From positions 3,844,001-3,908,000 of the forward strand of contig CATNEN010000029.1 of the NCBI GenBank assembly GCA_950097015.1: a stretch of DNA of 64,000 bases, given 5' to 3'. Under the pieces are notes generated by a model. It saw only the letters and a list, made by a program, of their open reading frames with translations. It was not told the origin of the DNA and ran no database searches. This DNA is from Macrostomum hystrix (lineage: Eukaryota > Animalia > Platyhelminthes). A program made the position numbers and the translations under genes. How positions within the stretch are numbered: the first letter of the stretch is position 1; the number at the start of each line of letters is the position of its first letter. Of this stretch, positions 47 through 64,000 are shown piece by piece.

Positions 47-506
47 CTCCAGCTTCGGAAGATTCCAGCTCAGGAAGATTCCAGTTTGGGAAGATTCCAG
101 CTTAGGATGATTCCAGTTTGGGAAAATTCCAGCTTAGAAAGATTCCAGTTTGGAAGATTCCAGCTTAGGAAGATTCCAGCTTAGGAAGATTCCAGCTTAG
201 GAAGATTCCAGCTCAGGAAGATTCCAGTTTGGGAAGATTCCAGCTTAGGATGATTCCAGTTTGGGAAAATTCCAGCTTAGAAAGATTCCAGTTTGGAAGA
301 TTCCAGCTTAGGAAGATTCCAGCTTAGGAAGATTCCAGCTTAGGAAGATTCCAGCTCAGGAAGATTCCAGTTTGGGAAGATTCCAGCTTAGAAAGATTCC
401 AGTTTGGAAGATTCCAGCTTAGGAAGATTCCAGCTTAGGAAGATTCCAGCTTAGGATGATTCCAGCTTGGGAAGATTCCTGTTTAAGAAGATTCCAGCTT
501 AGGAAG
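47..506. repeat. 16-bp tandem minisatellite (GGAAGATTCCAGCTTA)
   Basis: Unit read directly; variants such as AGTTTGGGAAGA and GGATGA recur. Confidence 0.95.
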
Positions 507-1165
507 CTATCGGGACAGTTCGATCCAAAGAACTGCTGTGTGGGAGAAATTGTGGAAAGGAAGGAATGACTTGGCGCCGGAACTTCGACGCAAAGTTAGC
601 TAACTAAAATTGGGAGAGCGGGTCGAGGGCAGGGAGGAACTGCAGTTGCGAGTAACTCAGCCAAGGCAGGTGGCAGTCGGCGCGCATTTCTTATTCAATT
701 TCGGGCCCTCTGCGGGGGGCTGCCGCCAAAGGAGGGACGGATTGGCCCACGATCGATAAGGGGATAGTGGGGGAGGCAGGGACAGCAAATATAAGTTTCG
801 CATTTAATCGCTTACTCCTTCTCCTCGGCTACCCCCCCCCCCAGTGCCGCCCGAAGGCAAAGTGAATTTTCAGGCCGGGCCGCCCAGTTGACTAGAAGTT
901 CTTCATCAACTTCGTCTGAGTCTGCGGACGCCCCAGTTGGTCGCTATCAGCATCCCCAATCCTTCCCATCTCGCTTCTTCACCCTTGCTCGGACTCTATT
1001 GGCTATTGGCCATCTCAAACAGCCGCTCACTCATCTCAAATAGCTCAGGCTGGTGGCGGATTTGCTCAACTGGAACTGGGGCCGTTTTCTCTAGAAATAA
1101 ATAATACTTGGGACAGAAACTGTAGGACACAGGCAAAGAGCGGACACGGGTCAACGGCTGCGGCA

Positions 1166-7635
<6,470 letters not shown>

Positions 7636-47200: not shown

Positions 47201-48588
47201 GTGGCTAATGCTTCTCTGTAATATCTAATTACAGTATTGATCTCCCTGTGGCTAATGCTTCTCTGCAATATCTAATTACAGTATTGATCTCCCTGTGGCT
47301 AATGCTTCTCTGTAATATCTAATTACAGTATTGATCTACCTGTGGCTAATGCTTCTCTGTAATATCTAATTACAGTATTGATCTCCCTGTGGCTAATTCT
47401 TCTCTGCAATATCTAATTACAGTATTGATCTCCCTGTGGCTAATGCTTCTCTGTAATATCTAATTACAGTATTGATCTCCCTGTGGCTAATTCTTCTCTG
47501 CAATATCTAATTACAGTATTGATCTCCCTGTGGCTAATGCTTCTCTGTAATATCTAATTACAGTATTGATCTCCCTGTGGCTAATTCTTCTCTGCAATAT
47601 CTAATTACAGTATTGATCTCCCTGTGGCTAATGCTTCTCTGTAATATCTAATTACAGTATTGATCTCCCTGTGGCTAATTCTTCTCTGCAATATCTAATT
47701 ACAGTATTGATCTCCCTGTGGCTAATGCTTCTCTGTAATATCTAATTACAGTATTGATCTCCCTGTGGCTAATTCTTCTCTGCAATATCTAATTACAGTA
47801 TTGATCTCCCTGTGGCTAATTCTTCTCTGCAATATCTAATTACAGTATTGATCTCCCTGTGGCTAATGCTTCTCTGTAATATCTAATTACAGTATTGATC
47901 TCCCTGTGGCTAATTCTTCTCTGCAATATCTAATTACAGTATTGATCTCCCTGTGGCTAATGCTTCTCTGTAATATCTAATTACAGTATTGATCTCCCTG
48001 TGGCTAATTCTTCTCTGCAATATCTTATTGCAGTATTGATCTCCCTGTGGCTAATGCTTCTCTGCAATATCTAATTACAGTATTGATCTCCCTGTGGCTA
48101 ATGCTTCTCTGTAATATCTTATTACAGTATTGATCTCCCTGTGGCTAATGCTTCTCTGCAATATCTAATTACAGTATTGATCTCCCTGTGGCTAATGCTT
48201 CTCTGCAATATCTAATTACAGTATTGATCTCCCTGTGGCTAATGCTTCTCTGTAATATCTAATTACAGTATTGATCTCCCTGTGGCTAATGCTTCTCTGT
48301 AATATCTTATTACAGTATTGATCTCCCTGTGGCTAATGCTTCTCTGCAATATCTAATTACAGTATTGATCTCCCTGTGGCTAATGCTTCTCTGTAATATC
48401 TTATTACAGTATTGATCTCCCTGTGGCTAATGCTTCTCTGTAATATCTTATTACAGTATTGATCTCCCTGTGGCTAATGCTTCTCTGTAATATCTTATTA
48501 CAGTATTGATCTCCCTGTGGCTAATGCTTCTCTGTAATATCTTATTACAGTATTGATCTCCCTGTGGCTAATGCTTCTCTGTAATATC
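44240..48588. repeat. 47-bp satellite, about 92 copies
   Basis: GTGGCTAATGCTTCTCTGTAATATCTAATTACAGTATTGATCTCCCT; no spacers. Confidence 0.98.
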
Positions 48589-48776
48589 GTTTAAAATTTT
48601 GAGTAAGGCAGGCAATTAATGGACTTAGATAGTTAATGCGAAGGGCAGCAGTTGATGAAGTCGACAAAGTCTATTGAAGTAGATTAGTAAGAGCAGTGAG
48701 ACTTATCAGTTGTTTTGCTTGGAAAGTCTAGTATCCGCTTCTGTTGCAGCTAAAGCCTTTTTCTGGGATAACTACC

Positions 48777-51536
48777 ATTTCAAACCACTTTCTATTAATT
48801 AGCATTCCGGTGCAAATATGCCGCGACCTCTGGGCGATGCTGGTCACCAGGCCGATGCTCGTCCAGGTAAGAAAGGTGAGCCGCGCCCTGCTCTGCTGCC
48901 TCTGCCTCTGCTGTGGCTTCTAACTGCGGCAGGACGGGAAGTCGGCGAGGACAGCGAAGCCCCCGGCGTCGCATCGAGCGTCGTCGAGAACGCAATTGGC
49001 GTGGACGACTGAAAGGCCGCCTCCGTCGAGCTGCTGGCAATGCAGAACTGCCGGCCCCTGCCCCTGTGGCTCTGCCGGGTGGCGCCGGCGACCGTGAGAC
49101 TCACCAACATCGGGTCCCAGCTGTGACAAATCATGCGCTAAAGCTAGCTACGTTCAACTGCCGAACCTGGTCATGCTGCAAGAGGTATCAATAACTGCTG
49201 AACCAGATCTTCGTCGTGAGGAGTTGGGGGCAGGCTGGACGCTGTACTTCACGTCAGCGGACGGTAGAGGTCGCGGCGGAGTTGGAGCGCTTGTCGGACC
49301 ACGGCTGTGCGAGAGCGTCTGCTGCTTCAGCCTCTCAGCCCGGCTGTTGCGCGTGGACTTGAGACTGCGTCGTCGCATTGTGCGGCTGTTCTGTGCGTAC
49401 GCTCCCACCGCTGCCCACGCGCAGGAATTTTTCGAGTTCCTGTCGGAGCAGCTAGAGATGGTTGCGCAACGCGACACCCTGGTAGTGCTTGACGACGTCA
49501 ACGCCGTTGTGCCTCAGTCGCAGCGCTCCCCTTTCGTGTCGCCACGCCAGAACGCTAGCACCGATGCGCTAGTCGACCTGATGTCGAGGTTCGACTTGGT
49601 GTCGGCCAACACGCACTTCCGCTAACCGCCAAATCGGCTGGTGACCTTCGCTGGGCGCAAGCGTAGGAGGCGGAAAGCGCGCGGCCGTTTTGCCACTACC
49701 CACTTGGCACAGCTCGACCACATGCTAGTGTGCTACCGCGAATGCAGCTGGCTGAGCAACTGCGACACAGTGGAACCGCAGGTCGTTCGATCCGATCGCC
49801 GCCTGCTCTACTGTGACCTGCGGCTCTCCGACCCGCTCTACAGGCCGCCGAAGCGCCCCCGACGTAGATATTTTCGCGCCCTGCAGGATCCCGGCACGCG
49901 GGGCCGCTTTGCGTACGCTTTCGCGGTGGCCCTGGGGTCTGCACAGGCGGCGGACTACAATTCAATAGGAAAGGCTATAACAACTGCCGCAGCCAAGACT
50001 CTGCCATTGATGGAGCTCGCGTCACGGCAGCTACCAGTTTGGGCGAGCGACCCTGAGGTCCGTGAGGCCCGGTGCACAGTCGAAGGACTGCGACGTGCCA
50101 GGCGCCCGACTTCCGACGCCGAGAAGGCACAGGCGGACATCTACGAGAAGCGGCAGCAGGCTGCTGTGGACGACGCCATCCGGGCAGTCGCGTCAGTCGG
50201 TCTTGATCGGCAAAACCGAGTCGTCTGGCCGGCCGTAAATGCCCTTACTGGTCAAAAGAAGAAGGCCGCGCTAAACCTGGCTGGTGACTCTGCGGAGGAG
50301 CGCAGAAATATGCTGCGCAGTTTCTTCGCCACCATCGTCAATGCGCCGTCACCGTCACTGCCTGCTGACCTATCGCTGCACCCCCTGATGTAGCACTGCC
50401 GAAGCAGTAGGATTTCGACATCCGTCCTTTCACTAGCACTGACGTTGTGGAGTTCGCTCGCAAAATGCCGGGAGGTCGCGCTATCGGCCCTGACGAAGTG
50501 CCCGTCGAGGCGTTGCGAGTCCCGAGGGTCGTCACTGAGGTGGCCCGCGTGATGAACGGCGTCTTGGTGTCGCAATATGCCGCAGCAGCTCATTACCGCT
50601 ATCATGGCGCTGTACGTGGACACCATCGCTGCGGTAGTGACGCCAGACGGCCTGTCGGACCTGTTCAGCATGACCTCGGGAGTGCTGCAGGGGGGACACG
50701 CTGGCGCCTTTTCTATTCGTTCTGGTGATGGACTGGGTGCTCCGGACCGGCCTGCCATCTGCGGACGACGGCTTCCTGCTGTGTCGGCGCACGAGCCGGC
50801 GGCACCCCGAGAAGAGGCTCTGCACTCTCGGCTACGCTGCTGCTGTCTTCGACGGTCGAAGGCGCCCAACGGCTGCTGGATGGCCTGACAAAGGCGGCGG
50901 CAAGAGTCGGTCTCATCGTGAACGCGCAGAAGACCGAGGTGCTGACGGTGCCGCACAATCTGCCGGCCGAGATTCTGCTCCGGGACGACAGCCGCCCCGG
51001 GACCCCTCTCCGAGGTGCCGCCAGTTCGTTTATCTCGGCGGACTAGTGCCGGACGTGAGCCACGATTTGGCGAGACAGTGCAGTGCGCACGGTGCTGCTT
51101 TCGGGCGCGCTGACGCACAGCGCCAGGTCGCAGCTTTTCTAGGCGGTTGTTGAGATGCTTAGACCTGGAAACGAGACGACCGACTCACTGTACAAGCGAG
51201 CGCGACTGACGCGGCCTTCCGACCAGCTGCGGCAGCGGCGCCTGCGGCTGGCTGGGTACGTGATCAGGGCTGAAGCCTACTGCCCTGAGCCGCTGCAGGA
51301 TGTGCTTCTGTGGACTCCGCAGGGACCGCGCAGGCGCGGACAGAGACGATCGGTCCGTTGTATCGACTTGCTCTTCTCCGACGCGCGCGCCCCGATCCAG
51401 GTTGACGGAGTGAAGCATGTCAGCGATGTCAACTAGGCCTTAAGCGCGCGTTTTGACGCTTCCCCCTTTTTCGGGCCACTGCGTGGCCGACGGGTTGCGT
51501 ATTATTATTAATATTATTACGATTATTTTATTATTA
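48777..51536 (+). mobile_element. Decayed RTE-like non-LTR retrotransposon (APE + partly deleted RT, (ATT)n tail)
   Basis: LKLATFNCRT, LQEV..GGVG, AYAPT, QLDHMLV, AIGPDEVPVE, GVLQG..LAPFLFVLVMDWVL, with stops and frameshifts. Tail ATTATTATTA at 51501-51536; possible TSD AACTACC at 48770-48776 and 51537-51543. Confidence 0.8.
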
Positions 51537-52173: not shown

Positions 52174-53751
52174 ATGGCCGTGATACAGCTACTGCTTCAT
52201 CGCAAGAGGCTGCTGTTGTCCTGCGTGACCACTCTGTCGCTACTGGCTGTTGCGTGGCAGTTCTCTGCCGAGACTGACTTGCCGCACGGCTGCAAGGGCC
52301 TACTAGCCGGCAGCGCTCGCGAAGTCCTACGTGCAGAGGCCAGAGGCTCACTCAGGCCGACCGATTTCATGGAGGACGTCGAGATGACGGCCCTGTCGTG
52401 CTCCCAGCTGACTGCTGGCTACTGGACGGGGCCTGTCAGCGACCTGGAGCTCGGCTTCCCCATCGCATTCAGCGTGGTGGCGCATCGCAGCTTCTACCAG
52501 GTCAGCCATCTGGAGCCTCGGCTTGGGCTGTTAAAAGCCAAGCAAATTTCATAGATTGCTGATGTGGTTTTCTTCGCAATGAAATCGAACTCGTATATTT
52601 GTTTGTGATGCTCGCGAGCAATTAAAAAATAAATTAGTTTGTATTAGGGCGTTAAATCCCTCTAGCATGCAACTGTACCTTGGCTGGGATCGTGATCACC
52701 ATAGACACAACTTTTGGGTGCGGATAGTCCTGATAGTCGAAGCCTTTCAGCGGCCTGATCACCACATCGAAGCCAGCCACTTTTGATTGCTTCGCAGGTG
52801 AACCGACTAATGCAGGCTGTGCACCGCTCTCACAACACCTACTGTCTGCACATCGACTCGAAGTCGTCCGCAAAATTCACGGCAGCGGCCAAGCGCCTGG
52901 CCAGCTGCCTCAGCAACCTTGTCCTGGTCGAGTCGCCTGTGGTCTGGGGTCAGGCTTCTGTCCTGCTGGCCGACTTGCGCTGCTTCAGTGCGCTGCTCTA
53001 CTCTAACAGGGTGAGTGCATTGTTGCGTGGTCTGAAAATGAGCAGCTCACTGAATGCTAGAGAGTGTCCCGATGCTTTACAGACGTGGAACTATGTGATC
53101 AACCTGACCGGACAGGAGTACCCGATCCGAACCCTCATGGAGATGGTTCAGATCCTCAAGCTGATGAACGGCAGCAATAACATGGAGCGACTCATCCCAA
53201 GAAACTACAATCCCTATCCGAGAATGACCGACGACACGGGCCTGTCCGACCTGCGCTGGTACAAGGGCTCCGCACACGCCATCATCAGCGGAGCAGCCGT
53301 GCGCTACATGCTGGAAGACCGCAGAGCCCAGCTGATCCTGCAGCACATTCAGAAGCACTACGTCAACGGTCGGACCATTCCGGACGAGACCTTCTACGCC
53401 ACCCTCAACCACAACTACGAGCTGCTGGCGTTTCCCGGATCCTACACTGGCAACCTCGTCACGACGAACAGCGAGTACCGTCAGATCTACCGCTACAAGA
53501 TCTGGTCGCAGAACTGCAGGTCAGGTCTCAGCGTTCGCGGCATCTGCATCATCGGCGCTGCCGACCTCAAAGACTTCAACTCGAGACCGGAGCTCATCGC
53601 CAACAAGATGTACTTCGACTTTCAGAGCGACGCATTCCTCTGCGTCCAGGAGAGGTTCTGGAACAACACGAAGGCCGACTACGACCCCAGGCTGAAGAAG
53701 ACCTTTGTTGTTCCGTTGAGTTTCTACCAGAACTTGAATATTGTTCGTTAA
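52174..53751 (+). CDS. GCNT-like paralog 2 (402 aa); exons 52174-52500, 52798-53010, 53083-53751
   Basis: Same motifs and intron positions as paralog 1, with its own TM N-terminus. Confidence 0.9.
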
Positions 53752-54109: not shown

Positions 54110-54285
54110 TCGACAAAAGCGCATGAGTGGGTGTCCCGCGCCCTGGCTCGGATTCTGTGCAGCTTCAGGCTGTCACGCATGGTGTCCACGTCCAATACGA
54201 CGAAGGTGAGCACACGCTGCTGCTGCCCTCTGTCGGCACCAGATTGACAATCTCGGTGGTCTTGACAGCGTGGGCTTCAGGCTTA
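54110..54285 (-). pseudogene. Diverged, deleted fragment of the LINE ORF1 (gag-like) family
   Basis: QQRVLTFVVLDV..MRDSLKL..HRIRARA vs QQPLLTFVALDV..MLRESLKLDITSVHRIRARA in the 57429-60101 ORF. Confidence 0.7.
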
Positions 54286-54294
54286 ATTTTTGTT

Positions 54295-55940
54295 AAAAAT
54301 AAAATATATAAAATTTTGACAGATCAGAAACTTCAAAAACCCTACTACAGCGACAAAGGATTCTTTGTAGGAAAAAATACAGCCACCAAACTCGCAGAAC
54401 TAAGTAATGAATCAATACAAACAGTTGAAAGATGTCTCTCTAAACAAGCAGTCTACCGAGTCTATTTCCCTGCACCTGTTAAATTTACAAGACCCCACTT
54501 TAACATCTATAAACCTAATGAGGCGCACCAAGCAGATCTTCTGCTTCTCCCCAATGACTCAGGCTACAAGTATGCGCTCACAGTTATAGACATTGCCTCC
54601 AGATATAAAGAAGCCAGACCACTTAAGACTAAGAAGTCAGAAGCAGTAGCAGCTGCCCTCCAAGACATTTACAAAAACTCTCCGCTCTAGGGATGCCAAC
54701 CGGTTTTAAAACCGGTTTAAAAAAACGGTTTTAGCAGGAAAACCGGTTCTACAAAAAAAACTTTTTTTGTCCGGTTTTTTGACGGTTTTTAATGGGTTTT
54801 TTATTTTAATTATGTCTCACAGAGTCACAATTTTTGCACTTTGGAGAAAAAATAACTGGTAACAAAATTTTTCTAAATCGTTGCTTTGTAACTTCATAAT
54901 CGTAATTCGTAGTTGTAGTTGTAGAGTCTGAATTCCTGAAAAGAATATGAAAAACCTCGGAGTCCGCAGGACTCAGTAGTACTCAGTGTCAGTATGGTAA
55001 TTAATTAATAATGTATGTATAGATGTATAGATTAATTAGTTAAAATTAAACTTGAAATTAAATCTAAGTTGAACTTGAAGTATAAATCTAAATTGGGGCC
55101 TAATATAAAACTATCTAAGTCTAAACCACAGACACTATAATAACTTATAGTATCTGTTATTACGAGTATAGTATCTGTGGTCTAAACCTAAAAACATCAA
55201 GGGTTCGCCGTTTCTAATCTAACCATCCCAGGGTACCGCCATTTCGAGACTGTGACCAGTTTGCCTTGGCCAAAATCTTTATATTAAGTTCGCATTGGGT
55301 CTTTATTTTAGTTCGCATTTAGTTCGCATTGGCTACGGAACAATTCCGAAGAAAGTCCACGGAAAATTTGAATTGGCGCGATATTCAATTTCCGCGAAAC
55401 CTAACTATAGCAAATTTAAAATTAATAATTCCAAGAAACTTTTATTATTACTTATCGGCACGCACACCTTTAACAAATTCACGATTGTATATAAGTTCTA
55501 TGTTCTATGCTTATATAGTGCTTTTTAAAAACTTGGCACACAAACCGGTTTTTAAAGACCGGTTTTCTTATAAAAGGCGGTTTTCAAACCGGTTAACCGG
55601 TTCTCAAAAAGGGCCGGTTTTTGGCATCTCTACTCCGCTCACATACCCGCAAAGCTTTATGACTGATCCTGGCAAATAATCCATGGGTGCAGTCAAATCC
55701 CTTATGGAAAAGAACAATACGAAAATGCGCTACGGAAGAACTGAGCTCCATATAGAGACCAGGCTTTCGTTGAAAGATTCAATCTAGCAAAGAGACTTTT
55801 CACAAAGCAGACAGCTGAAGAGCTGAAACAAAAAATTGGCCAATACCATACCAAGTGGGGCAGACCGGCTCCCAGCTCCAATAAATCAACTCAATAATGA
55901 AATTTCTCGAGTGTCGGGACTAAAGCCTTCTACAGCAATT
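54295..55940 (+). pseudogene. Polinton/Maverick-type retroviral-like integrase relic split by a hAT MITE
   Basis: HQADLLLLP..YKYALTVIDIASRYKEARPL before the MITE; TYPQSFMTDPGK*, RDQAFVERFN and LNNEISRVSGLKP after it, with a stop and frameshifts. Confidence 0.75.
54688..55632. mobile_element. 945-bp hAT-like non-autonomous element
   Basis: TIR TAGGGATGCCAA / TTGGCATCTCTA, subterminal AACCGGTT repeats, 8-bp TSD CTCCGCTC at 54680-54687 and 55633-55640. Confidence 0.9.
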
Positions 55941-56401: not shown

Positions 56402-57360
56402 CTGGCTTCCGCAGCTCGTGCCGCAGCAGCTTTGGCCTCAGCTGCCGCCTTCGTCGCCTTGGTGTGCACCTCCTGCGCGACAGTGCAGACTCGGCTGGTC
56501 GTGCGGTGCTGACCACCGCAGTTGGAGCATGTCGCCGGGCCTTCGTGCTGGCAGTCCTTCCAGACGAGCGAGCCGCCACAGATTCGGCATGGCAGCTCCG
56601 CCTGGCACTGGGCGGCACGGTAACCGAACTGCTGGCAGCGCTGGCACTGCAGGGCGCGGACCGGCTCGTCGGTGCGGCTCTCCTCGCAGCTGAACTTCAG
56701 GAAGTCAGTGCAGATGCCTTCGCGAAGGCACTGGTCAAATGTCGCTCTCGACTTCGTAAAGATGCGCATGTACCGGGTGGCCTGCCCGGATGCTCGCGCA
56801 CGGATCCGATGCACACTCGTGATGTCGAGCTTCAAGGACTCGCGGAGCATGCTGGCAAATTCGGCCTCCGTGAAGGAAAACGGCACGTCGAGCGCCACAA
56901 AGGTGAGCAGTGGCTGCTGCCGTACTCTGTCAGCGCCAGTCCGGTTGTCCAGCGGCCGTGATCGTGCTGGTCGACGCTCGACACGGTGTCCGAGGAGGCT
57001 GTCCTGACGCAGAGCACCGCCTAGGAAAACGTTGTAATCCCGCTCAGTGGCCGGGAATACTAGGTAGGCGGGCTGATTGGCCATCTCGGCTGTGTTGATG
57101 GCACGAGCATCGCCGGCAAAGCTGGCCTACAGCAAGGTGATGAAGGCCACCAGCTTGCCTGCCGCACTCTGATGGACCTCGAAGACCACCGGTGGAATGG
57201 CAGCCTGAGGTCCCTTGGGAGGTGCGCGAGCCCAAGCCACTTGTGCATAGGGCCGCGCCGTCGTAGTTTGTGTAGTTGAAGCCGCCGCCGCTGCCGCCGC
57301 CGCCGACGCCGCGACGAACCCGTCACCGCGGTCGCCCACGTAGCCGCCGCACCCCGGCTG
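56402..57360 (-). mobile_element. LINE copy C: internal ORF1 fragment (gag/CCHC part), truncated at both ends, with stops
   Basis: Roughly 90% similar by eye to 57895-58845; contains a W-to-TAG change and a knuckle H-to-Y change. Confidence 0.85.
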
Positions 57361-60300
57361 TAATTTTCAGACCCGTTGTCTGGGTAATAGGGTTCCCATT
57401 TAAATTGAGGAATTTACAGTTTTCTGGTTTAGCTGCCTGGGCCCACGACCACGGTGGCGGTGGAGGCCATGCCAGACACGTCCTGGAGGACAGCCCGCAC
57501 AATGTCCTCAACCATTTTACTGGTCGATTCCACTGTGAGGAGCTCACCAGGCGGCCTGGACAGGGACCGCACAATCACCTGGGTCAGAGAGCGGGTGATC
57601 AGGGGCAACAGCATGCTCACCATCTGCTTCAAGTCAGTCTGCTGCTGCTGCTGCTGCTGTGGCTCACTGCCAGCATCCAGGGAGGGTGCAGCCTCATTGG
57701 CGCTCGTGCACCTGGCGCTGACAGTCTCGGCAGCCGGTCGGCAGCTGGCATCATCATTGCTGATGAACAGCGGCCGGATGGCGGCATTGACGGGCACGTT
57801 GCGGCGGCCTTGGCGCATCAGCCAGCCACTGTCCGAAGCGTCGGACATGTCGGCGGGCGCACTCGAGGCAGGCGGAGCATCCGTAGCCGCGGCTTCCGCA
57901 GCTCGCGCCGCAGCAGCTTTGGCCTCAGCTGCCGCCTTCGTCGCCTTGGCGTGCTCCTCCTGCGCAACAGTGCAGGCTCGGCTGGTCGTGCGGTGCTGAC
58001 CACCGCAGTTGGAGCATGTCGCCGGGCCTTCGTGCTGGCAGTCCTTCCAGGCATGCGCGCCGCCGCAGATTCTGCATCGCAGCTCTGCCTGGCACTGAGC
58101 TGCTCGGTGGCCGAACTGCTGGCAGCGCTGGCACTGCAGGGCGCGGACCGGCTCGTCGGTGCGGCTCTCTTCGCAGCTGAACTTCAGAAATTCAGTGCAG
58201 ATGCCTTCGCGAAGGCACTGGTCGAATGTCGCTCTCGACTTCGTAAAGATGCGCATGTACCGGGTGGCCTGTCCGGATGCTCGCGCACGGATCCGATGCA
58301 CACTCGTGATGTCGAGCTTCAGGGACTCGCGGAGCATGCTGGCGAATTCGGCTTCCGTGAAGGAAAACGGCACGTCGAGCGCCACAAAGGTGAGCAGTGG
58401 CTGCTGCCGTACTCTGTCAGCGCCAGTCCGGTTGTCCAGCGGCCGTGATCGTGCTGGTCGACGCTCGACACGGTGTCCGAGGAGGCTGTCCTGACGCAGA
58501 GCACCGCCTAGGAAGACGTTGTAATCCCGCTCAGTGGCCGGGAAAACTAGGTAGGCGGGCTGATTGGCCATTTCGGCTGTGTTGACGGCACGGGCATCGC
58601 CGGAAAAATTGGCCTGCAGCCAGGTGATGAAGGCCACCAGCTTGCCCGCCGCGTTTCGGTGAACTTCAAAGACCACCGGTGGAATGGCAGCCTGCGGTCT
58701 TCGCAATGGATCGCGGGCCGAAGCCACCTGCGCATAGGGCTGCGCTGTCGCAGCCTGGGTCGTTGAAGCCGCCGCCGCCGACGCCGCCGACGAACCCGTC
58801 ACCGCGGTCGCCGACGCTGCCGTCGCACCAGCCGCCGCACCTCGGCCGCCGCCGCCACCCCGCGTGCCTCGCTGTCTGCCGCCGCCGCCACCGCGGCTGC
58901 CTCGCTGCTGACCGCCGCCGCCGCGCTGACCACGTGCGCCGCGCTGACCACCGCCGCCGCGCTCTGCCTGCTGGTCCTGGGGCTGGCCTGGGTTGCCTTG
59001 CCGGTCGCTGAAGGGACCGCAGTCCAGTGGCTGGCTGTAGGTCGGGTCGTCGGGCGCCACCCTCTTGCGCCGCAGCTCCGGTTTGGTGACGCGGAACGTC
59101 AGCGAAATGCGGACGCCGGTCTGAGTGCGAGCTGCAGGCACCTGATGCTGCAGCCGCTTCTGACAATTTCCTCCCATCAGGATCAGCGATCCAGGGAGCG
59201 TCAGAAATCGGTGCGTGACGTTGCCGTCACGTCGACGCAACATAAAAGTGCGCTCAGCGCCGAAAGACACTGTCGCAATGGTCGGCTTGTCGCCGAGCTC
59301 CTCCTCGTCATCCGCATGCCACGGAATCCGGTCGTCTGGCTCGGTGTAGAAGTTCACCAGAACGGAGTTGAACTTCGGGACCTCGAGCCCAGCATCGTCG
59401 TAAAGGAAGTCACGAATGTCTTCGATTACGGGATGCCAGGTTTGGTTCTCCTTCAGCTCAACCCCGCTGTAGGTGTACGCCGGGCCGATCCAGAAGACAC
59501 GGCGCTGCTCGTGCGGGCGATGACGGAAGGCGAGTGGGAGCACGTCTTCTATCAGGCGCTGGTAGATCTGGTCGGCGACCTCGCCAAGAAAGTAGGGCGC
59601 ATAGACGATGTTGCAGTCACCCGCGTAGCTCGTCTTCTGACACTCGCTGAAGTCCGGCTCGTCAGGGAAGACGATTTGAGACACATCAGCCTCGGACTGT
59701 ACAGCGGTGGGCTTTGGGATAGTTGTTAGGGCACTTGCCATATCAGATGCCGTTGGCGCTGGCGCAGGTGCTGCCGCAGCCACGGTCTGTTGGGCAACCG
59801 TCTCGGCTGCCTCGGCTTCATCAACGGACATTTCGTTTAATTCAGCGGTCGCGGGGGCCGCAGTCCCTGCTGGAGGCTCGTCTTCGACGATGACAAGCCG
59901 ACCATCTGGCGGGCTGAGCGAGCCGCGGTCTTGGTCGCAGTTGGCCGGTTCTAAAATCTCGCTGGCCGGCATCGGAGTCGACATCAGCGCTGTCGCGACC
60001 TTCGGCTGTAGCTTGCGACTGGCATCCTCAGTGCGGCCGTACCGATGCTCGAGCGAGGGGCGGCCGTCGTGTTTTTTTGCAGTGGCGCTATTCGCAGCCA
60101 TGTGGTGTGATTTCTCACTAGTGCAGTCTGGGTGAGCAAAATAAACAAAGGGGGTAGGTGGCACGCAAAGTGCGCACTCAATGGAGGGGGTGGGGTGACA
60201 ACTAGACTAAAACAACAAGGACAGGGGGAGAGAAAAACATCAAAATAAAGCTAAAGCAGTAAAGAAAATACAAAGGACACTATAGGGAGCTTACTGGTGT

Positions 60301-60443
60301 ACTTTAAAAGTACCCCCTTCTAGGAATGGGGTTGCACAAATCAAGGAACACTCAATGAATGTACCTCTCCACGGAAATCTTTGTTGTTAAAACGAATTCC
60401 CCGAAGTACTGGGGAGCGGGTCAGTTCCGAGGAACTCTGCCGC
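57361..60443 (-). mobile_element. LINE copy B: 5' UTR, intact ORF1 and only the first ~70 nt after the ORF1 stop
   Basis: The sequence after the ORF1 stop matches copy A up to CTGAAAATTA, then joins copy C. The 5' boundary is inferred. Confidence 0.8.
57429..60101 (-). CDS. LINE ORF1 (890 aa from the first ATG): AlkB-family 2OG-Fe(II) dioxygenase (~59080-59610) + RGG linker + gag-like region with 3 CCHC knuckles (~57970-58134)
   Basis: FNSVLVNFY..WHADDE..IATVSFGAERTF..GSLILM..LQHQVP..RISLTFR; CQRCQQFGHRAAQC, CRICGGAHAWKDC and CSNCGGQHRTTSRAC; one uninterrupted frame with no introns. Confidence 0.92.
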   Translation of the reverse strand: MAANSATAKKHDGRPSLEHRYGRTEDASRKLQPKVATALMSTPMPASEILEPANCDQDRGSLSPPDGRLVIVEDEPPAGTAAPATAELNEMSVDEAEAAETVAQQTVAAAAPAPAPTASDMASALTTIPKPTAVQSEADVSQIVFPDEPDFSECQKTSYAGDCNIVYAPYFLGEVADQIYQRLIEDVLPLAFRHRPHEQRRVFWIGPAYTYSGVELKENQTWHPVIEDIRDFLYDDAGLEVPKFNSVLVNFYTEPDDRIPWHADDEEELGDKPTIATVSFGAERTFMLRRRDGNVTHRFLTLPGSLILMGGNCQKRLQHQVPAARTQTGVRISLTFRVTKPELRRKRVAPDDPTYSQPLDCGPFSDRQGNPGQPQDQQAERGGGGQRGARGQRGGGGQQRGSRGGGGGRQRGTRGGGGGRGAAAGATAASATAVTGSSAASAAAASTTQAATAQPYAQVASARDPLRRPQAAIPPVVFEVHRNAAGKLVAFITWLQANFSGDARAVNTAEMANQPAYLVFPATERDYNVFLGGALRQDSLLGHRVERRPARSRPLDNRTGADRVRQQPLLTFVALDVPFSFTEAEFASMLRESLKLDITSVHRIRARASGQATRYMRIFTKSRATFDQCLREGICTEFLKFSCEESRTDEPVRALQCQRCQQFGHRAAQCQAELRCRICGGAHAWKDCQHEGPATCSNCGGQHRTTSRACTVAQEEHAKATKAAAEAKAAAARAAEAAATDAPPASSAPADMSDASDSGWLMRQGRRNVPVNAAIRPLFISNDDASCRPAAETVSARCTSANEAAPSLDAGSEPQQQQQQQTDLKQMVSMLLPLITRSLTQVIVRSLSRPPGELLTVESTSKMVEDIVRAVLQDVSGMASTATVVVGPGS

Positions 60444-61058
60444 TATATTTTTTAATATATTTAATCGAAATTTATTTAAAATATACAAGCGTTTCGATCT
60501 GGATTATACGAATATTGAAAATAAAAATAAAACAATAAAACAATAATTCAATATTTGGCAATATTTGGGCACGCATTGGAAGATAAAAGGGGAGAAATAT
60601 ACAAAGGGAATCCCGCACAAAGAAGGGATCTAATAAAAAAGGGAAATCTAAAAAGCATGCATGCAAGATATTTGTGAGCGCAATTAAAAGCAATTAGAAT
60701 ATTTGTTAGCAAAAATAGAAAATAAAAATAGTAAATTAAACCATGAAATGCGAATTAAAAACATTTCTAGGCAATGCGGTACATATTACGTATAAAAATA
60801 GGCAAAAGTAAAAAGAAAGGATTTATTTGGGAATTAAAAACTCTGGTGTGTAAAGAGCTAGCAGTTTATGAGCAAATAGCAACATAACAAAAGCAAAAAG
60901 TACTTTTTAGGCAATAAAATCACGTTAATCAGTTTGAAAAAACGTAAAGAATATAATATCATAGCAGCTGAGCACTGCTCACCAGCCCTCTTGAGCTCAG
61001 GCAGCTATTTGAGTTTCATTTTGGTTTTTCTTTCAGGGCCATAGTTGTCAGAGACTGC

Positions 61059-61875
61059 TCAACCCTGGATTTGGAGTCGGTTCTGCCTGTTGATTTGTCC
61101 CCGCCTCAGGGTAGCCCACAGGACATTGAGGATGGGGACTCGGCCCGGAGCGCGAGGCAGCTCCGGCTCGATGTGGAAGCCGTGCAGCCGAGCTGCTCTC
61201 ATCTTGAGCAGCCAGGCCACACCGAGCTGTTTGACTCTGGCCGAGAGCATTGGCATGCCGGCCATTTTGTGAAGGTACTCGGTGCTCAGGTAGGAAGGCA
61301 CACCGTAGCAGATTCGCAGAGCAAGGTTCTGGATCTTTTGTAGCTTGATCTGGTTGGTGACGCAGATCAGAGTCAAGATTGGGGCGCCGTAGGTGAGAGC
61401 GCTCTCACCGTAGGCCCTGTACAGCATCTTGAGAGTGACGCTGCTCAGCTTGGTGATCTTAGCGATGCGGCACAGGGACATGACAATGGCCCTGCACGTA
61501 TTCGCCATGTTGTCGACGTGTTTATTTAGGCAAAGATTGGCGTCGAGGAGGACGCCTAGAAATTTTACTTCCTGACAGTAGGGGACCTCCGTCTGCCCCA
61601 GCTGCAGTTTGGGTCGCAAGTCGGCGCGAGCTGTCGGCTTGTAGTTGAAGGCGATGGCCTTGCTCTTGTCGGCATTCAGTCTGATGCCTTGCTTTCCGCA
61701 CCACTCCCAGACTTGTCTGAGGTAGCTCTGGAGGCATGTCCGCAGACCAGCAAAGGTGTCTGCGGAGGCCCAGATGGCCATGTCGTCAGCAAATTGACTG
61801 CGTTTCACGTTTGGATTCTCAGGAATCGGCATTGTGCTGACGTACAGCAGGTACAGGAGAGGACTCAAGATTGGT
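61059..61875 (-). pseudogene. ORF2 reverse transcriptase, C-terminal half only
   Basis: ILSPLLYLLY, QFADDMAIW, GIRLNADKS, VKFLGVLLD and LQKIQNLALR; no RNase H follows. Confidence 0.9.
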
Positions 61876-62975
61876 GAGCTTGCCGCTCTGGAAGGAAGTG
61901 ATTTCCCTTTTGATCCTGTTGGCCATTTGGTTGGCCAGCCTTTTAAAGTTTTCATCCCGGGTGCTGTTGAAGAGGCGTCTGAGTCGTCGGCGCTCTCTAA
62001 TCAGCTCAAGGATGTGCTTGGGCAGAGCATTTCGGCCACCACAGTCTGGCACAGTCGACTCAATGACCGTGTGGATGGCTTTTGTGATGAGCTCGACCTC
62101 GGCGTCGATTTGCTGAGCACTCGATAGGCGAGTCGGCTGTTCAGGAAGAAGGGCTTCACTGATCTTCAGCCTGAACTGATCCCAGTCGGTTTTGGAAAAG
62201 TTTTTCGGCTTAGCGGGACCTGCCCACTTTGCCGACTGAATGTTGAGGGTGAGGATGATTGGCAGGTGGTCGCTGTCCAGGTCGGGACCGACTGCAAAGT
62301 CCTGCACAAAGGGCAGAAAGTCCTCCGTGGCCAGGCCGAGGTCCAAGACATTCCTGGAAGTGACGCCATTCTTGGTGGCGATTCTGGTGAACTGGCCAAC
62401 TTGATTGAGGATGGTGGGCGAGGCCAGACCTTCAGAGAGCCAGTCGTACAGCTCATGGCCAGCCCTGTTGTTGCTGCTGTCACCGCCAAGGAAGCGGTGT
62501 CTGGCATTGAGGTCGCCAAGGAGAACACTGCGTCTGCGCGAGACCAGGCTCTTGAGCAGGTTCAGGTTCAGGTGGTAAGGTGCCGGAGACCTGTACACCA
62601 GAGCCAGATTAAAGTCGGCACCGTGGGAGTTGTCAGACAGGCAGACAGTGCAGGAGATGGCTTCATGGTTCACATTGTCGTAGTGCAAGCGAACATTTGT
62701 GAGTTTCACGCGCGGTGAGTGAGCAAGGAGCAGGCCGCGTCTGACATGCGGAGTGTCGTACCGGATGATGGAGTAGCCAGGGATCTGGACCGTGTGCGAA
62801 CTCTTGAGAATGGTTTCAGAGAAGAGAGCAATGTCTATCTCTTGACTAATGACCCATTGGGTGAGTTCTCTGCTTTTCGGGTGAAACCCTCTGCAGTTGA
62901 GGTGCATAATTTTCAGACCCGTTGTCTGGGTAATAGGGTTCCCATTTAAATTGAGGAATTTACAGTTTTCTGGTT
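61876..62975 (-). pseudogene. ORF2 apurinic-like endonuclease (APE) and tether
   Basis: LKIMHLNCRG, LFSET, VYRSP, LLGDLNARH, VLDLGL, SDHLPI, KTDWDQF. Confidence 0.92.
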
Positions 62976-64000
62976 TAGCTGCCTGGGCCCACGACCACGG
63001 TGGCGGTGGAGGCCATGCCAGACACGTCCTGGAGGACAGCCCGCACAATGTCCTCAACCATTTTACTGGTCGATTCCACTGTGAGGAGCTCACCAGGCGG
63101 CCTGGACAGGGCCCGCACAATCACCTGGGTCAGAGAGCGGGTGATCAGGGGCAACAGCATGCTCACCATCTGCTTCAAGTCAGTCTGCTGCTGCTGCTGT
63201 GGCTCACTGCCAGCGTCCAGGGAGGGTGCAGCCTCATTGGCGCTCGTGCACCTGGTGCTGACAGTCTCGGCAGCCGGTCGGCTCCTGGCATCATCGTTGC
63301 TGATGAACAGCGGCCGGATGGCGGCATTGACGGGCACGTTGCGGCGGCCTTGGCGCATCAGCCAGCCACTGTCCGAAGCGTCGGACACGTCGGCGGGCGC
63401 ACTCGAGGCAGGCGGAGCATCCGTAGCCGCGGCTTCCGCAGCTCGCGCCGCAGCAGCTTTGGCCTCAGCTGCCGCCTTCGTCGCCTTGGCGTGCTCCTCC
63501 TGCGCAACAGTGCAGGCTCGGCTGGTCGTGCGGTGCTGACCACCGCAGTTGGAGCATGTCGCCGGGCCTTCGTGCTGGCAGTCCTTCCAGGCATGCGAGC
63601 CGCCGCAGATTCGGCATCGCAGCTCCACCTGGCACTGAGCTGCACGGTGGCCGAACTGCTGGCAGCGCTGGCACTGCAGGGCGCGGACCGGCTCGTCGGT
63701 GCGGCTCTCTTCGCAGCTGAACTTCAGAAAGTCAGTGCAGATGCCTTCGCGAAGGCACTAGTCGAATGTCGCTCTCGACTTCGTAAAGATGCGCATGTAC
63801 CGGGTGGCCTGCCCGGATGCTCGCGCACGGATCCGATGCACACTCGTGATGTCGAGCTTCAGGGACTCGCGGAGCATGCTGGCGAATTCGGCTTCCGTGA
63901 AGGAAAACGGCACGTCGAGCGCCACAAAGGTGAGCAGTGGCTGCTGCCGTACTCTGTCAGCGCCAGTCCGGTTGTCCAGCGGCCGTGATCGTGCTGGTCG

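What the first reader, a model, noticed from the sequence alone, without database searches (positions are those of the whole stretch)
57429..60101. Non-LTR retrotransposon ORF1 fused to an intact AlkB-family oxidative demethylase
Seen: one intron-less 890-aa frame containing an AlkB domain with the Fe ligands HxD (59310-59318) and H (59145-59147), the 2OG-binding NxY and RxxxxxR (59091-59111), then an RGG linker and a gag-like region with three CCHC knuckles. It is followed by the start of an APE-RT ORF2 identical to that of the neighbouring copy. Known: ALKBH2/3-type enzymes remove m1A/m3C from DNA/RNA; AlkB domains occur in replicase polyproteins of some plant RNA viruses; LINE ORF1p coats its own RNA in cis; m1A/m3C impede reverse transcriptase. 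Inference: the element carries its own eraser to repair or demethylate its RNA or cDNA inside the RNP, or to counter host methylation-based marking. I do not recall this architecture as a characterised system but cannot check databases.
Basis: partly seen in the sequence, partly recalled or inferred. Interest (0 to 1): 0.93.

Follow-up and report, generated by a model that had tools for sequence, protein, structure and literature searches.

The report
LINE coat protein with built-in AlkB demethylase
A family of jumping genes (LINEs) in a Macrostomum-type flatworm, which live in U5 snRNA genes, has a complete and evolutionarily protected ALKBH3-like nucleic-acid demethylase built into its RNA-binding ORF1 protein. 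I could not find this accessory enzyme described for LINEs, and it suggests that methylated bases limit their copying.

Summary
Window 57429-60101 (minus strand) is one uninterrupted 890-codon frame. It reads: variable N-terminus, AlkB domain (Pfam PF13532, E 1.5e-22; HxD, H, NxY and RxxxxxR all present), RGG/Ala linker, two RRM-like folds, three CCHC knuckles.

One detail is wrong. This copy stops at the first base of the ORF2 start codon and has no APE-RT.

The architecture is not a one-off. The genome holds at least 10 copies with an intact ORF1, most followed by an intact APE-RT ORF2. It also holds several families only 25-45% identical that keep AlkB+gag in one frame.

AlkB is as conserved as the RNA-binding core. 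It is under strong purifying selection (pN/pS 0.06-0.16). All LINE AlkBs form one clade among ALKBH2/3-like enzymes. The closest solved structure is human ALKBH3.

The element sits in U5 snRNA genes in head-to-tail arrays. Seven of the eight U5 loci carry it.

Most likely function (inferred, not measured): an ORF1p-tethered eraser of methyl lesions or marks that block reverse transcriptase (m1A/m3C), acting on the element's RNA or single-stranded DNA.

I found no paper describing AlkB in a non-LTR element. The scan has already followed up this same family on other DNA (s1-300409, s1-366050).

The parts
57361..60382 (-). Copy B of the U5-resident LINE. It corresponds to reference positions 49-3102 of a 6572-bp full-length copy (U5 3' part, 5'UTR, whole ORF1, 68-nt spacer). 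It is cut at the first base of the ORF2 ATG, so it has no ORF2.
   Evidence: blastn against the full-length C3 copy, 94% identity; self-blast; sequence at the break
60309..60377 (-). 3' part of U5 snRNA (about positions 49-117) forming the 5' head of copy B. It is joined directly to the 3' end of copy A (...TTTTAACAACAAAGA|TTTCCGTGGAGAGG).
   Evidence: sequence; complete U5 (Rfam RF00020, 72-83 bits) at the head of the arrays and of single copies; 9 identical junctions in the genome
60102..60308 (-). 5' untranslated region between the U5 part and the ORF1 ATG
57429..60101 (-). ORF1, 890 codons plus stop, no interruption: N-terminal variable region, AlkB, RGG/Ala linker, two RRM-like domains, three CCHC knuckles, variable tail
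59673..60101 (-). N-terminal variable, low-complexity region (aa 1-143); 8% mean identity among divergent families
59052..59672 (-). AlkB (ALKBH3/2-like Fe(II)/2-oxoglutarate dioxygenase) domain, aa 144-350
   Evidence: Pfam PF13532 E 1.5e-22; human ALKBH3 E 1e-24 by sequence; model pLDDT 93.6, TM 0.77/0.83 to ALKBH3 8jnk; pN/pS 0.06-0.16
59346..59354 (-). NxY (N250, Y252), 2-oxoglutarate/substrate pocket; invariant in 13 divergent ORF1s
59310..59318 (-). HxD iron ligands (H262, D264). H is invariant. D is present in 12 of 13 sequences; the exception has E and is a copy with a degenerate gag.
59145..59147 (-). Third iron ligand H319, invariant
59091..59111 (-). RxxxxxR (R331, R337), 2-oxoglutarate-binding arginines, invariant
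58707..59051 (-). RGG-rich then Ala/Ser/Thr-rich linker (aa 351-465; 9 RG dipeptides); not conserved in sequence among families
58461..58679 (-). RRM-like domain 1 (aa 475-547)
   Evidence: AlphaFold model beta-alpha-beta-beta-alpha-beta; Foldseek hits to tandem RRMs, E 5e-7 to 1e-4
58167..58394 (-). RRM-like domain 2 (aa 570-645)
57972..58133 (-). Three CCHC zinc knuckles (aa 657-670, 676-688, 696-710)
   Evidence: regular-expression scan; Cys/His nearly invariant in the gag alignment
56404..57353 (-). Fragment C: inner piece of another ORF1 (reference 1628-2578: linker, RRMs, knuckles), 91% identical to copy B, abutting the truncated end of B
60378..64000 (-). Copy A (runs off the window; whole copy = window-equivalent 60378-65960). 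It has the 3' UTR ending ...AACAACAAAGA without poly(A), an ORF2 with a 938-bp internal deletion (APE piece 61819-63120, RT tail 61059-61955), and the ORF1 3' half from 62975.

Best explanation
SHOWN. The finding is one copy of a roughly 6.5-kb APE-type non-LTR retrotransposon family of a Macrostomum-type flatworm. Its ORF1 protein is a single polypeptide: variable N-terminus, ALKBH3/2-like Fe(II)/2-oxoglutarate dioxygenase, RGG/Ala linker, two RRM-like domains, three CCHC knuckles. The AlkB module is an ancestral part of ORF1 in a whole clade of such LINEs. It is selectively maintained and all its catalytic residues are kept. The family resides in U5 snRNA genes at loop 1 (CUAAAGA|UUUCCG). 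It carries the U5 3' part at its own 5' end, so a complete U5 is rebuilt, and it forms head-to-tail arrays.

INFERRED. ORF1p coats the element's RNA in cis through its RRMs, knuckles and RGG motifs. This holds the demethylase, on a flexible linker, next to the template. The enzyme oxidatively removes N-methyl groups that sit on the Watson-Crick face and stall reverse transcriptase: 1-methyladenine and 3-methylcytosine, the substrates of ALKBH3 on RNA and single-stranded DNA. It would act on the RNA template and possibly on the single-stranded cDNA or target DNA during target-primed reverse transcription. That would raise the yield of full-length copies. Whether the methyl groups are chemical damage or host-imposed marks is open.
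For: Architecture: stop-free 890-codon frame; PF13532 at 81 bits; two RRM-like folds plus three CCHC knuckles.

Family context: at least 10 copies with an intact ORF1 on 5 contigs, and seven of them followed by an intact 985-1014-aa APE+RT frame. A 12-17-bp target-site duplication flanks the C3 copy.

Depth of the fusion: families at 25-45% identity (815-aa, 1123-aa, 781-aa, 883/892-aa and 853-aa frames) keep AlkB+gag in one frame, with APE-RT just downstream where sequence was available. The same holds in M. lignano proteins and in contigs from other samples.

Catalytic competence: N250, Y252, H262, H319, R331 and R337 are invariant, and D264 is present in 12 of 13. They align residue for residue with human ALKBH3 motifs. 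The model has pLDDT 93.6; the top structural hits are ALKBH3 bound to ssDNA/3mC (TM 0.77/0.83), then ALKBH2.

Selection: pN/pS of the AlkB part is 0.06-0.16 between lineages, Fisher p 5e-5 to 2e-11, as low as or lower than the RRM+CCHC core in every pair. Among 7 divergent ORF1s, AlkB is 37% identical, against RRMs 35%, knuckles 37% and linker/N-terminus 8%.

Single origin: LINE AlkBs form one clade (98/93). The closest ORF2 relatives outside the clade lack AlkB.

Precedent: AlkB domains of plant RNA viruses demethylate RNA and are thought to protect the genome (PMC2553587). Established knowledge: m1A and m3C block reverse transcriptases, and AlkB treatment is used to relieve this in tRNA sequencing.
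Against: No enzymatic activity, substrate or expression was shown. The contigs of the runs laid on the stretch are of unknown kind, RNA or DNA.

Similarity to ALKBH3 does not fix the substrate. ALKBH3 has also been reported to act on m6A in tRNA, and the only TE-borne AlkB tested so far (orchid Ty3/Gypsy) erases m6A (PMC9289625).

The copy in the window has no ORF2. Its private changes are about half non-synonymous (10 synonymous, 12 non-synonymous), so this copy itself is probably a decaying, non-autonomous relic.

Most LINEs do without such an enzyme, so the need for it in this clade is unexplained.
Confidence: 0.55

Rival explanations
1. Epitranscriptomic counter-defence. The domain erases a regulatory mark (m6A or m1A) that the host puts on the element's RNA to destabilise, sequester or silence it, rather than repairing damage.
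For: An orchid Ty3/Gypsy lineage carries an active m6A demethylase, and its authors propose exactly this role (PMC9289625). m6A writers and erasers modulate L1 mobility in mammals (PMC7873242, abstract). Purifying selection and a tethered position fit this as well as they fit repair.
Against: The LINE domain belongs to the ALKBH2/3 group, not to ALKBH5/FTO. The top 25 structural hits are ALKBH3/2, and no ALKBH5 or FTO entry is among the 50 hits listed. Sequence E-values are 1e-24 for ALKBH3 and 5e-18 for ALKBH2. m6A does not block reverse transcription.
Confidence: 0.2
2. The enzyme acts mainly on DNA. It would repair 3mC/1mA in the single-stranded target or the new cDNA at heavily transcribed small-RNA genes. 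Alternatively it would remove 3mC that host DNA methyltransferases make as a by-product when they methylate new insertions.
For: ALKBH3 prefers single-stranded DNA as well as RNA, and the best structural matches are ALKBH3-ssDNA complexes. DNMTs generate 3mC, and M. lignano keeps DNMT1, DNMT3 and ALKB2 (PMC9246332). The targets (U5, 5S) are highly transcribed genes.
Against: The domain is fused to RNA-binding modules, not to ORF2, which handles the DNA. The host already has its own ALKBH3-like gene. There are no methylation data for this species.
Confidence: 0.12
3. The AlkB module acts on host RNAs rather than on the element, for instance on the small RNA whose gene it occupies or on tRNAs. 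The effect would benefit the element or the host, so the fusion would be partly domesticated.
For: Seven of the 8 U5 loci carry the element, and its transcript would start with a complete U5. ALKBH3 acts on tRNA in mammals (knowledge).
Against: No m1A/m3C is known in U5 or 5S. The domain is kept in families with different targets. The copies behave as mobile elements: target-site duplication, ORF2, many lineages.
Confidence: 0.07
4. Non-catalytic role: the domain serves only as an extra nucleic-acid-binding or oligomerisation module.
For: No activity was measured.
Against: Iron and 2OG ligands are invariant across families that share only 25-40% identity. A binding-only module would not need to keep them.
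Confidence: 0.04
5. One-off chimera, misassembly or a host gene next to a LINE.
For: The copy in the window is rearranged: no ORF2, and it is joined to another ORF1 fragment.
Against: The same open frame occurs at 10 or more loci on 5 contigs and in divergent families, in M. lignano and in unrelated assemblies. The host ALKBH3-like gene is a separate locus with an intron.
Confidence: 0.02

Closest known systems
Human ALKBH3 (and ALKBH2), Fe(II)/2-oxoglutarate repair demethylases for 1-methyladenine/3-methylcytosine
   Same: Same fold and the same catalytic and cofactor residues. Best sequence match E 1e-24 and best structural match TM 0.77/0.83, 32-34% identity. The LINE clade lies among ALKBH2/3-like sequences, next to metazoan ALKBH3.
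   Different: It is not a free-standing cellular enzyme. It is intron-less, multi-copy and fused in frame to a LINE gag-like protein. A sister relation to metazoan ALKBH3 is neither established nor rejected (p-AU 0.50). Activity is untested.
AlkB domains in replicase polyproteins of plant RNA viruses (Flexiviridae and others; van den Born et al. 2008, PMC2553587)
   Same: A selfish RNA-based replicator carries its own AlkB as part of a polyprotein. The proposed role is to keep the RNA template free of m1A/m3C.
   Different: The host is an animal, the replicator is a retrotransposon, and the fusion partner is the RNA-coating protein rather than the replicase. No viral sequences were in my tree, so the relationship was not tested.
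Orchid Ty3/Gypsy elements with an ALKBH5-like m6A demethylase (PMC9289625)
   Same: A retrotransposon lineage captured an AlkB-family dioxygenase.
   Different: Those are LTR elements of plants. The domain is ALKBH5-like and sits in a separate extra ORF, and m6A activity was shown. Here the element is a non-LTR element of an animal, the domain is ALKBH3-like, and it lies inside ORF1.
LINE ORF1 proteins with accessory enzymatic or other domains (type I ORF1p with RRM + CCHC; the esterase ORF1p of CR1-like elements, PMC3905857; Jockey-superfamily ORF1 modules, PMC4120745)
   Same: The RRM-like plus CCHC core matches the type I gag-like ORF1p. As with the esterase, an enzyme has been grafted onto ORF1p.
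   Different: AlkB is not among the ORF1 modules in those surveys: the term does not occur in them (occurrence counts).
Site-specific non-LTR retrotransposons of small-RNA and rRNA genes (e.g. Utopia/Keno in U2 snRNA genes, PMC4640811; R1/R2 in rDNA; NeSL in spliced-leader genes)
   Same: Insertion at one defined position of a multicopy RNA gene, probable co-transcription from the host gene's promoter, head-to-tail arrays.
   Different: The target is U5 snRNA, and I found no paper on a U5-specific LINE. It has an APE-type endonuclease, whereas PMC4640811's abstract links most target-specific integration to restriction-like endonucleases. The element rebuilds a complete U5 at its head. Its RT clade could not be assigned.

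Membership tests
AlkB family (Pfam PF13532), ALKBH2/3 subgroup | Profile match above the curated threshold | tested here: met
   81.2 bits against a cut-off of 31.2, E 1.5e-22; also met in five divergent families
AlkB family (Pfam PF13532), ALKBH2/3 subgroup | Fe(II) triad HxD...H | tested here: met
   H262, D264 and H319 align with the WHSDDE / QHRVP motifs of ALKBH3
AlkB family (Pfam PF13532), ALKBH2/3 subgroup | 2-oxoglutarate binding RxxxxxR and NxY | tested here: met
   R331, R337, N250 and Y252 are invariant in 13 ORF1s
AlkB family (Pfam PF13532), ALKBH2/3 subgroup | Double-stranded beta-helix fold closest to ALKBH2/3 rather than ALKBH5/FTO | tested here: met
   Predicted model pLDDT 93.6. 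The top 25 PDB hits are ALKBH3/ALKBH2 (TM 0.69-0.77), followed by ALKBH6, E. coli AlkB and ALKBH8. This is a prediction, not a solved structure.
AlkB family (Pfam PF13532), ALKBH2/3 subgroup | Oxidative demethylation of m1A/m3C | not testable with these tools
   Needs a biochemical assay
APE-type non-LTR retrotransposon (LINE) | ORF2 with apurinic-like endonuclease and reverse transcriptase downstream of ORF1 | tested here: met
   Met for the family: a 1000-aa frame with PF14529/PF03372 and RVT_1. Not met for the copy in the finding's coordinates, which ends at the ORF2 ATG.
APE-type non-LTR retrotransposon (LINE) | Insertion with target-site duplication and a fixed 3' end | tested here: met
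   The C3 copy is flanked by AAAGACATACTAAAGAC on both sides. All copies end in ...TTTTAACAACAAAGA.
APE-type non-LTR retrotransposon (LINE) | Assignment to a named RT clade (Jockey, R1, CR1, I ...) | not testable with these tools
   No reference RT set was available. The closest outside relatives are unnamed 30%-identical APE-RT proteins of insects and fish without RNase H. In the PDB, only L1 and R2 proteins match the RT region.
Type I LINE ORF1p (RRM + CCHC knuckles) | RRM fold(s) followed by CCHC zinc knuckles | tested here: met
   Two beta-alpha-beta-beta-alpha-beta units (model pLDDT 75.6) hit tandem-RRM structures, E 5e-7 to 1e-4. Three CCHC knuckles. The fold is predicted from a shallow alignment of 11 sequences.
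Site-specific LINE of a small-RNA gene (U5 snRNA) | Same insertion point in the target gene at independent loci | tested here: met
   Seven of 8 U5 loci are heads of copies or arrays. Nine array junctions lie at U5 position 48/49. Three heads share a PSE-like upstream box, so they are native U5 genes.
Site-specific LINE of a small-RNA gene (U5 snRNA) | Endonuclease cleaves that site specifically | not testable with these tools
   Needs an in vitro cleavage assay. One off-target copy lies at a look-alike ACTAAAGAC site.
ALKBH5-like TE demethylase (orchid Ty3/Gypsy type) | AlkB domain of the ALKBH5 subgroup | tested here: not met
   The nearest relatives are ALKBH3/2 by sequence and by fold.

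The most novel reading that the evidence does not exclude
Base methylation on the Watson-Crick face (m1A/m3C), whether damage or a host-imposed mark, is a real in vivo barrier to target-primed reverse transcription. A whole clade of flatworm LINEs that live in small-RNA genes (U5, 5S, spliced leader) answered it by building an ALKBH3-type eraser into the protein that coats their RNA. This would be a self-repairing retrotransposon RNP, and possibly the footprint of an unrecognised methylation-based anti-transposon defence.
Probability: 0.3. Interest if true: 0.85.

Novelty: new variant of a known kind. Interest (0 to 1): 0.72.

Why it matters
LINE ORF1 proteins are seen as RNA chaperones and coats. 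The only enzyme known in them so far is an esterase of unclear role. A conserved nucleic-acid demethylase in ORF1p would be the first sign that methyl lesions or marks on RNA or single-stranded DNA limit LINE retrotransposition.

It makes that idea directly testable with a natural system. The system offers many intact copies, several independent families, and an RNAi-amenable flatworm genus.

It also extends the 'selfish replicators carry their own AlkB' theme from plant RNA viruses and one plant LTR lineage to animal non-LTR elements.

The U5 snRNA gene residence, with rebuilding of the U5 sequence, adds a new target to the list of site-specific LINEs.

Tried and rejected
- Whole-ORF1 word-based protein search found nothing. 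Low-complexity words probably swamped it. The exhaustive HMMER search with the AlkB domain replaced it.
- ESM Atlas look-up of ORF1 gave no usable hit.
- Expression is unresolved. The run search listed no holder on record as RNA. Contigs of two runs of unknown kind cover most of ORF1 at 90-99% identity, which shows presence only.
The 3' ends of the divergent families were therefore not seen.
- RT clade assignment failed. PDB matches are only L1 and R2 RTs, and the database relatives are unnamed.
- Origin from host ALKBH3 is unresolved. The quick tree puts metazoan ALKBH3 plus Macrostomum proteins as sister (SH-aLRT 84). The careful subset tree does not, although forcing it costs only 0.86 lnL (p-AU 0.50).
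- The organism behind the Logan contigs with AlkB-gag ORF1s (SRR316283xx-4xx, SRR24204725) could not be named. A paper search for the run prefix gave an unrelated hit. These proteins are only 35-37% identical to anything in this genome.
- One PDB search failed on a frame error of mine and was not repeated.
- Antisense frames of 330-390 aa inside ORF1 (for example 57276-58448 on the plus strand) were judged by-products of the 60-64% G+C content and were not pursued.
Full report
1. WHAT IS IN THE WINDOW

On the minus strand, 57429-60164 is one stop-free frame. It has 911 codons from a GTG and 890 from the ATG at 60101. Pfam finds a single domain, 2OG-FeII_Oxy_2 (the AlkB family), at 81.2 bits against a gathering score of 31.2.

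- HxD at 59310-59318 (H262, D264).
- The distal His at 59145-59147 (H319).
- RxxxxxR at 59091-59111 (R331, R337).
- NxY at 59346-59354.

After the domain comes a linker with nine RG dipeptides followed by an Ala/Ser/Thr-rich stretch (aa 351-465). Then comes a conserved 280-aa region ending in three CCHC knuckles (57972-58133).

An AlphaFold model of that region was built on 11 family sequences and has mean pLDDT 75.6. It shows two beta-alpha-beta-beta-alpha-beta units, and their best PDB matches are tandem RRM proteins (Pub1, U2AF65, HuR, hnRNP A1; Foldseek E 5e-7 to 1e-4). The 'gag-like' half is therefore a type I LINE ORF1p core: RRMs plus knuckles.

2. THE COPY ITSELF IS INCOMPLETE

I compared the window with a full-length copy on another contig (C3:11172873-11179444, 6572 bp). 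The window holds the lower end of a head-to-tail array.
- Copy A spans window-equivalent 60378-65960. Its ORF2 has a 938-bp deletion and its ORF1 has one TAG.
- Copy B, the finding, spans 57361-60382 and corresponds to reference positions 49-3102.
- A 950-bp inner ORF1 fragment lies at 56404-57353.

Copy B ends at the first base of the ORF2 start codon, 68 nt after the ORF1 stop. The statement that it is followed by the start of an APE-RT ORF2 is therefore not right.

Copy B is also a mosaic. Its N-terminal part is almost identical to one lineage and its gag part to another. It has 22 private codon changes, 10 synonymous and 12 non-synonymous. It looks like an old, non-autonomous copy.

3. THE ARCHITECTURE BELONGS TO A FAMILY AND TO A CLADE

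A six-frame search of the whole 220-Mb genome gives 66 matches. Ten copies have ORF1 open from the shared ATG (890-898 aa). Seven of these are followed by an intact 985-1014-aa frame with APE (PF14529, PF03372) and RVT_1 domains.

Beyond this family, frames of 815, 1123, 781, 883, 892, 836, 816 and 853 aa match both the AlkB part and the gag part at 29-58% identity. For two of them the start of an APE ORF2 lies directly downstream.

Outside this genome:
- The closest proteins are Macrostomum lignano predictions annotated only as 'Fe2OG dioxygenase domain-containing protein', 80-86% identical in the AlkB part. This identifies the host as a Macrostomum-type flatworm.
- AlkB+gag ORF1s also occur on contigs assembled from other public runs, one of them a 9-kb contig with ORF1, a small ORF and an APE-RT ORF2.
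- Two of these proteins are only 35-37% identical to anything in this genome. They come from other organisms or from families absent here.
- The nearest ORF2 relatives outside the clade (about 31% identity) have no AlkB within 4 kb upstream. One has only a CCHC ORF.

4. IS THE DOMAIN FUNCTIONAL?

Conservation of catalytic residues. I aligned 13 ORF1s that share 25-40% identity with the window protein, apart from its close kin. The iron ligands H262 and H319, the 2-oxoglutarate arginines R331 and R337, and N250/Y252 are invariant. D264 is kept in 12. The exception has Glu and comes from a copy with a degenerate gag.

Conservation relative to the rest of ORF1. Among seven divergent full-length ORF1s, mean pairwise identity is 37% for AlkB, 35% for the RRMs and 37% for the knuckles. 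It is only 8% for the N-terminus and the linker.

Selection. Between the three lineages of the U5 family, pN/pS of the AlkB part is 0.06-0.16 (Fisher p from 5e-5 to 2e-11). That is as low as or lower than the RRM+CCHC core in every pair. The domain is under purifying selection in the lineages that give rise to new copies.

5. WHAT KIND OF AlkB?

By sequence, the best solved relative is human ALKBH3 (E 1e-24), then ALKBH2 (5e-18). The alignment matches WHADDE to WHSDDE, QHQVP to QHRVP and RISLTFR to RVNLTFR.

A model built on 102 sequences has pLDDT 93.6 and pTM 0.90. It superposes best on ALKBH3 bound to ssDNA/3mC (TM 0.77/0.83, rmsd 2.1-3.3 A), then on ALKBH2. ALKBH6, E. coli AlkB and ALKBH8 follow far behind, and no ALKBH5 or FTO entry is among the 50 hits listed.

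In trees of the best 150 cluster representatives from 1.8 billion proteins, all LINE-linked AlkBs form one clade: SH-aLRT 99 in the quick tree and 98/93 in the careful subset. This argues for a single capture.

In the quick tree the weakly supported sister group holds bona fide metazoan ALKBH3 (vole, emu, nemertean, crinoid) and Macrostomum proteins. Holding LINE and ALKBH3 sequences together is not rejected (p-AU 0.50), but it is not shown either.

The host has its own ALKBH3-like gene at C7:11818250-11820727. It matches in two exon-like pieces, 82-90% identical to the M. lignano protein, so it has an intron, unlike the LINE copies.

6. SURROUNDINGS: A U5 snRNA GENE RESIDENT

Rfam finds a complete U5 snRNA (72-83 bits) exactly at the 5' end of the single copies and of the first unit of each array.

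Inside arrays, the 3' end of one unit (...TTTTAACAACAAAGA, no poly(A)) is joined to U5 position 49 of the next (TTTCCGTGGAGAGG...). This junction occurs nine times in the genome, including at 60378-60382 in the window.

An exact-pattern scan finds eight intact U5 loop-1 sequences in the genome. Seven are heads of this element and one (C1:23711119) is free.

Three heads (C12, C1, C29) share a PSE-like box about 55 nt upstream and TAACTCT at -1, as expected for native U5 genes. The C3 copy lacks both, has a whole U5 at its head, and is flanked by a 12-17-bp duplication of an ACTAAAGAC-type sequence.

The simplest reading has four steps:
- The element integrates at CUAAAGA|UUUCCG in U5 loop 1.
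- It carries U5 49-117 at its own 5' end, so a complete U5 is rebuilt.
- It is transcribed from the U5 promoter as a U5-headed RNA.
- Repeated insertion into the rebuilt U5 produces the arrays.

A divergent AlkB family has a complete 5S rRNA gene about 800 nt upstream of its ORF1.

7. MECHANISM

Shown: a LINE ORF1p with RNA-binding modules and a catalytically complete, selected ALKBH3-like domain on a low-complexity linker.

Inferred: the enzyme works in cis within the RNP on the element's RNA and possibly on single-stranded DNA intermediates. It would remove 1-methyladenine, 3-methylcytosine and similar adducts, which stall reverse transcriptases (established knowledge; it is the reason AlkB is used in tRNA sequencing).

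The precedent is the AlkB domains of plant RNA viruses, which demethylate RNA in vitro and are thought to protect the genome (PMC2553587).

Rivals:
- Erasure of a regulatory mark, as proposed for the ALKBH5-like m6A demethylase of orchid Ty3/Gypsy elements (PMC9289625).
- Repair of 3mC on DNA. This includes 3mC made by host DNMTs, which Macrostomum retains together with ALKB2 (PMC9246332).
- Action on host small RNAs.
- A non-catalytic role, which the invariant ligands make unlikely.

8. NOVELTY

Five full-text searches combined AlkB with non-LTR, ORF1, CCHC, Repbase, Macrostomum and dioxygenase terms. They returned no paper describing an AlkB domain in a non-LTR retrotransposon. The surveys of ORF1 domain content do not contain the word AlkB. 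The library lacks most subscription journals and Repbase itself, so prior description cannot be excluded.

I found no paper on a U5-specific LINE either.

Two follow-ups of this scan have already reached the same reading for this family on other DNA of the same genome (s1-300409; s1-366050, the next units of this array). My tests were made independently and agree with them.

9. VERDICT

The copy in the window is a truncated member of a live-looking family.

AlkB-in-ORF1 is an old, selected feature of a LINE clade. Its enzymatic role is plausible but unmeasured. It is a new variant of a known theme: selfish RNA-based replicators that carry their own AlkB.

Noticed in passing
window 60309-60382; L007:4413-4531; L034:6143-6261; L037:5245-5363; L002:4390-4508; L020:2217-2332: The LINE lives in U5 snRNA genes. 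A complete U5 sits at the head of each array or single copy. Array-internal junctions join the element's 3' end to U5 position 49. Seven of the 8 U5 loci in the genome carry it. One off-target copy took a whole U5 with it and has a 12-17-bp target duplication.
   Followed up: yes
L029:596-714 (C39:12721099-12721217): A complete 5S rRNA gene (118 bits) lies about 800 nt upstream of the ORF1 start of a divergent AlkB-LINE family (815-aa frame; two copies 10.6 kb apart). The clade may generally target small-RNA genes.
   Followed up: partly
window 57429-60101 compared with C25 and C3 copies: Copy B is a mosaic of two lineages: N-terminus identical to the C25/C29-3932541 lineage, gag close to the young C3 lineage. 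This points to recombination, gene conversion or template switching between lineages within arrays.
   Followed up: partly
G000:C1:8053349, C9:1393399, C11:6331102, C38:31549410, C39:17476033 (853-aa frames), C15:1355169 (792 aa): Another apparently young family with an AlkB domain in an 853-aa open frame, with identical scores at five loci plus one 792-aa variant. No sequence was fetched.
   Followed up: no
G000:C7:11818250-11820727: Probable host ALKBH3-like gene. It matches in two exon-like pieces, 82% and 90% identical to M. lignano PAA75878.1, about 1.8 kb apart.
   Followed up: partly
L048:2120-7398 (Logan SRR19430222): A 1012-aa protein whose AlkB domain falls inside the LINE AlkB clade but has no LINE gag. 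It is followed by an ORF with DUF8422 and HTH_animal domains. The same AlkB may sit in another kind of element.
   Followed up: no
window 48000-48704: Tandem array of a 47-bp unit, with at least 10 overlapping 282-nt registers at 68-98% identity.
   Followed up: no
window 49641-51153, 52783-53751, 54127-54690: Other open frames near the array: fragments resembling another LINE ORF2, a 322-aa frame resembling a branching glycosyltransferase (my impression from the sequence, not tested), and a 187-aa frame resembling an integrase or transposase piece (not tested).
   Followed up: no
window 57276-58448 (+), 62897-63988 (+): Long antisense open frames (363-390 aa) inside ORF1 in every copy. They are probably a by-product of the 60-64% G+C content and codon bias of ORF1.
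   Followed up: no
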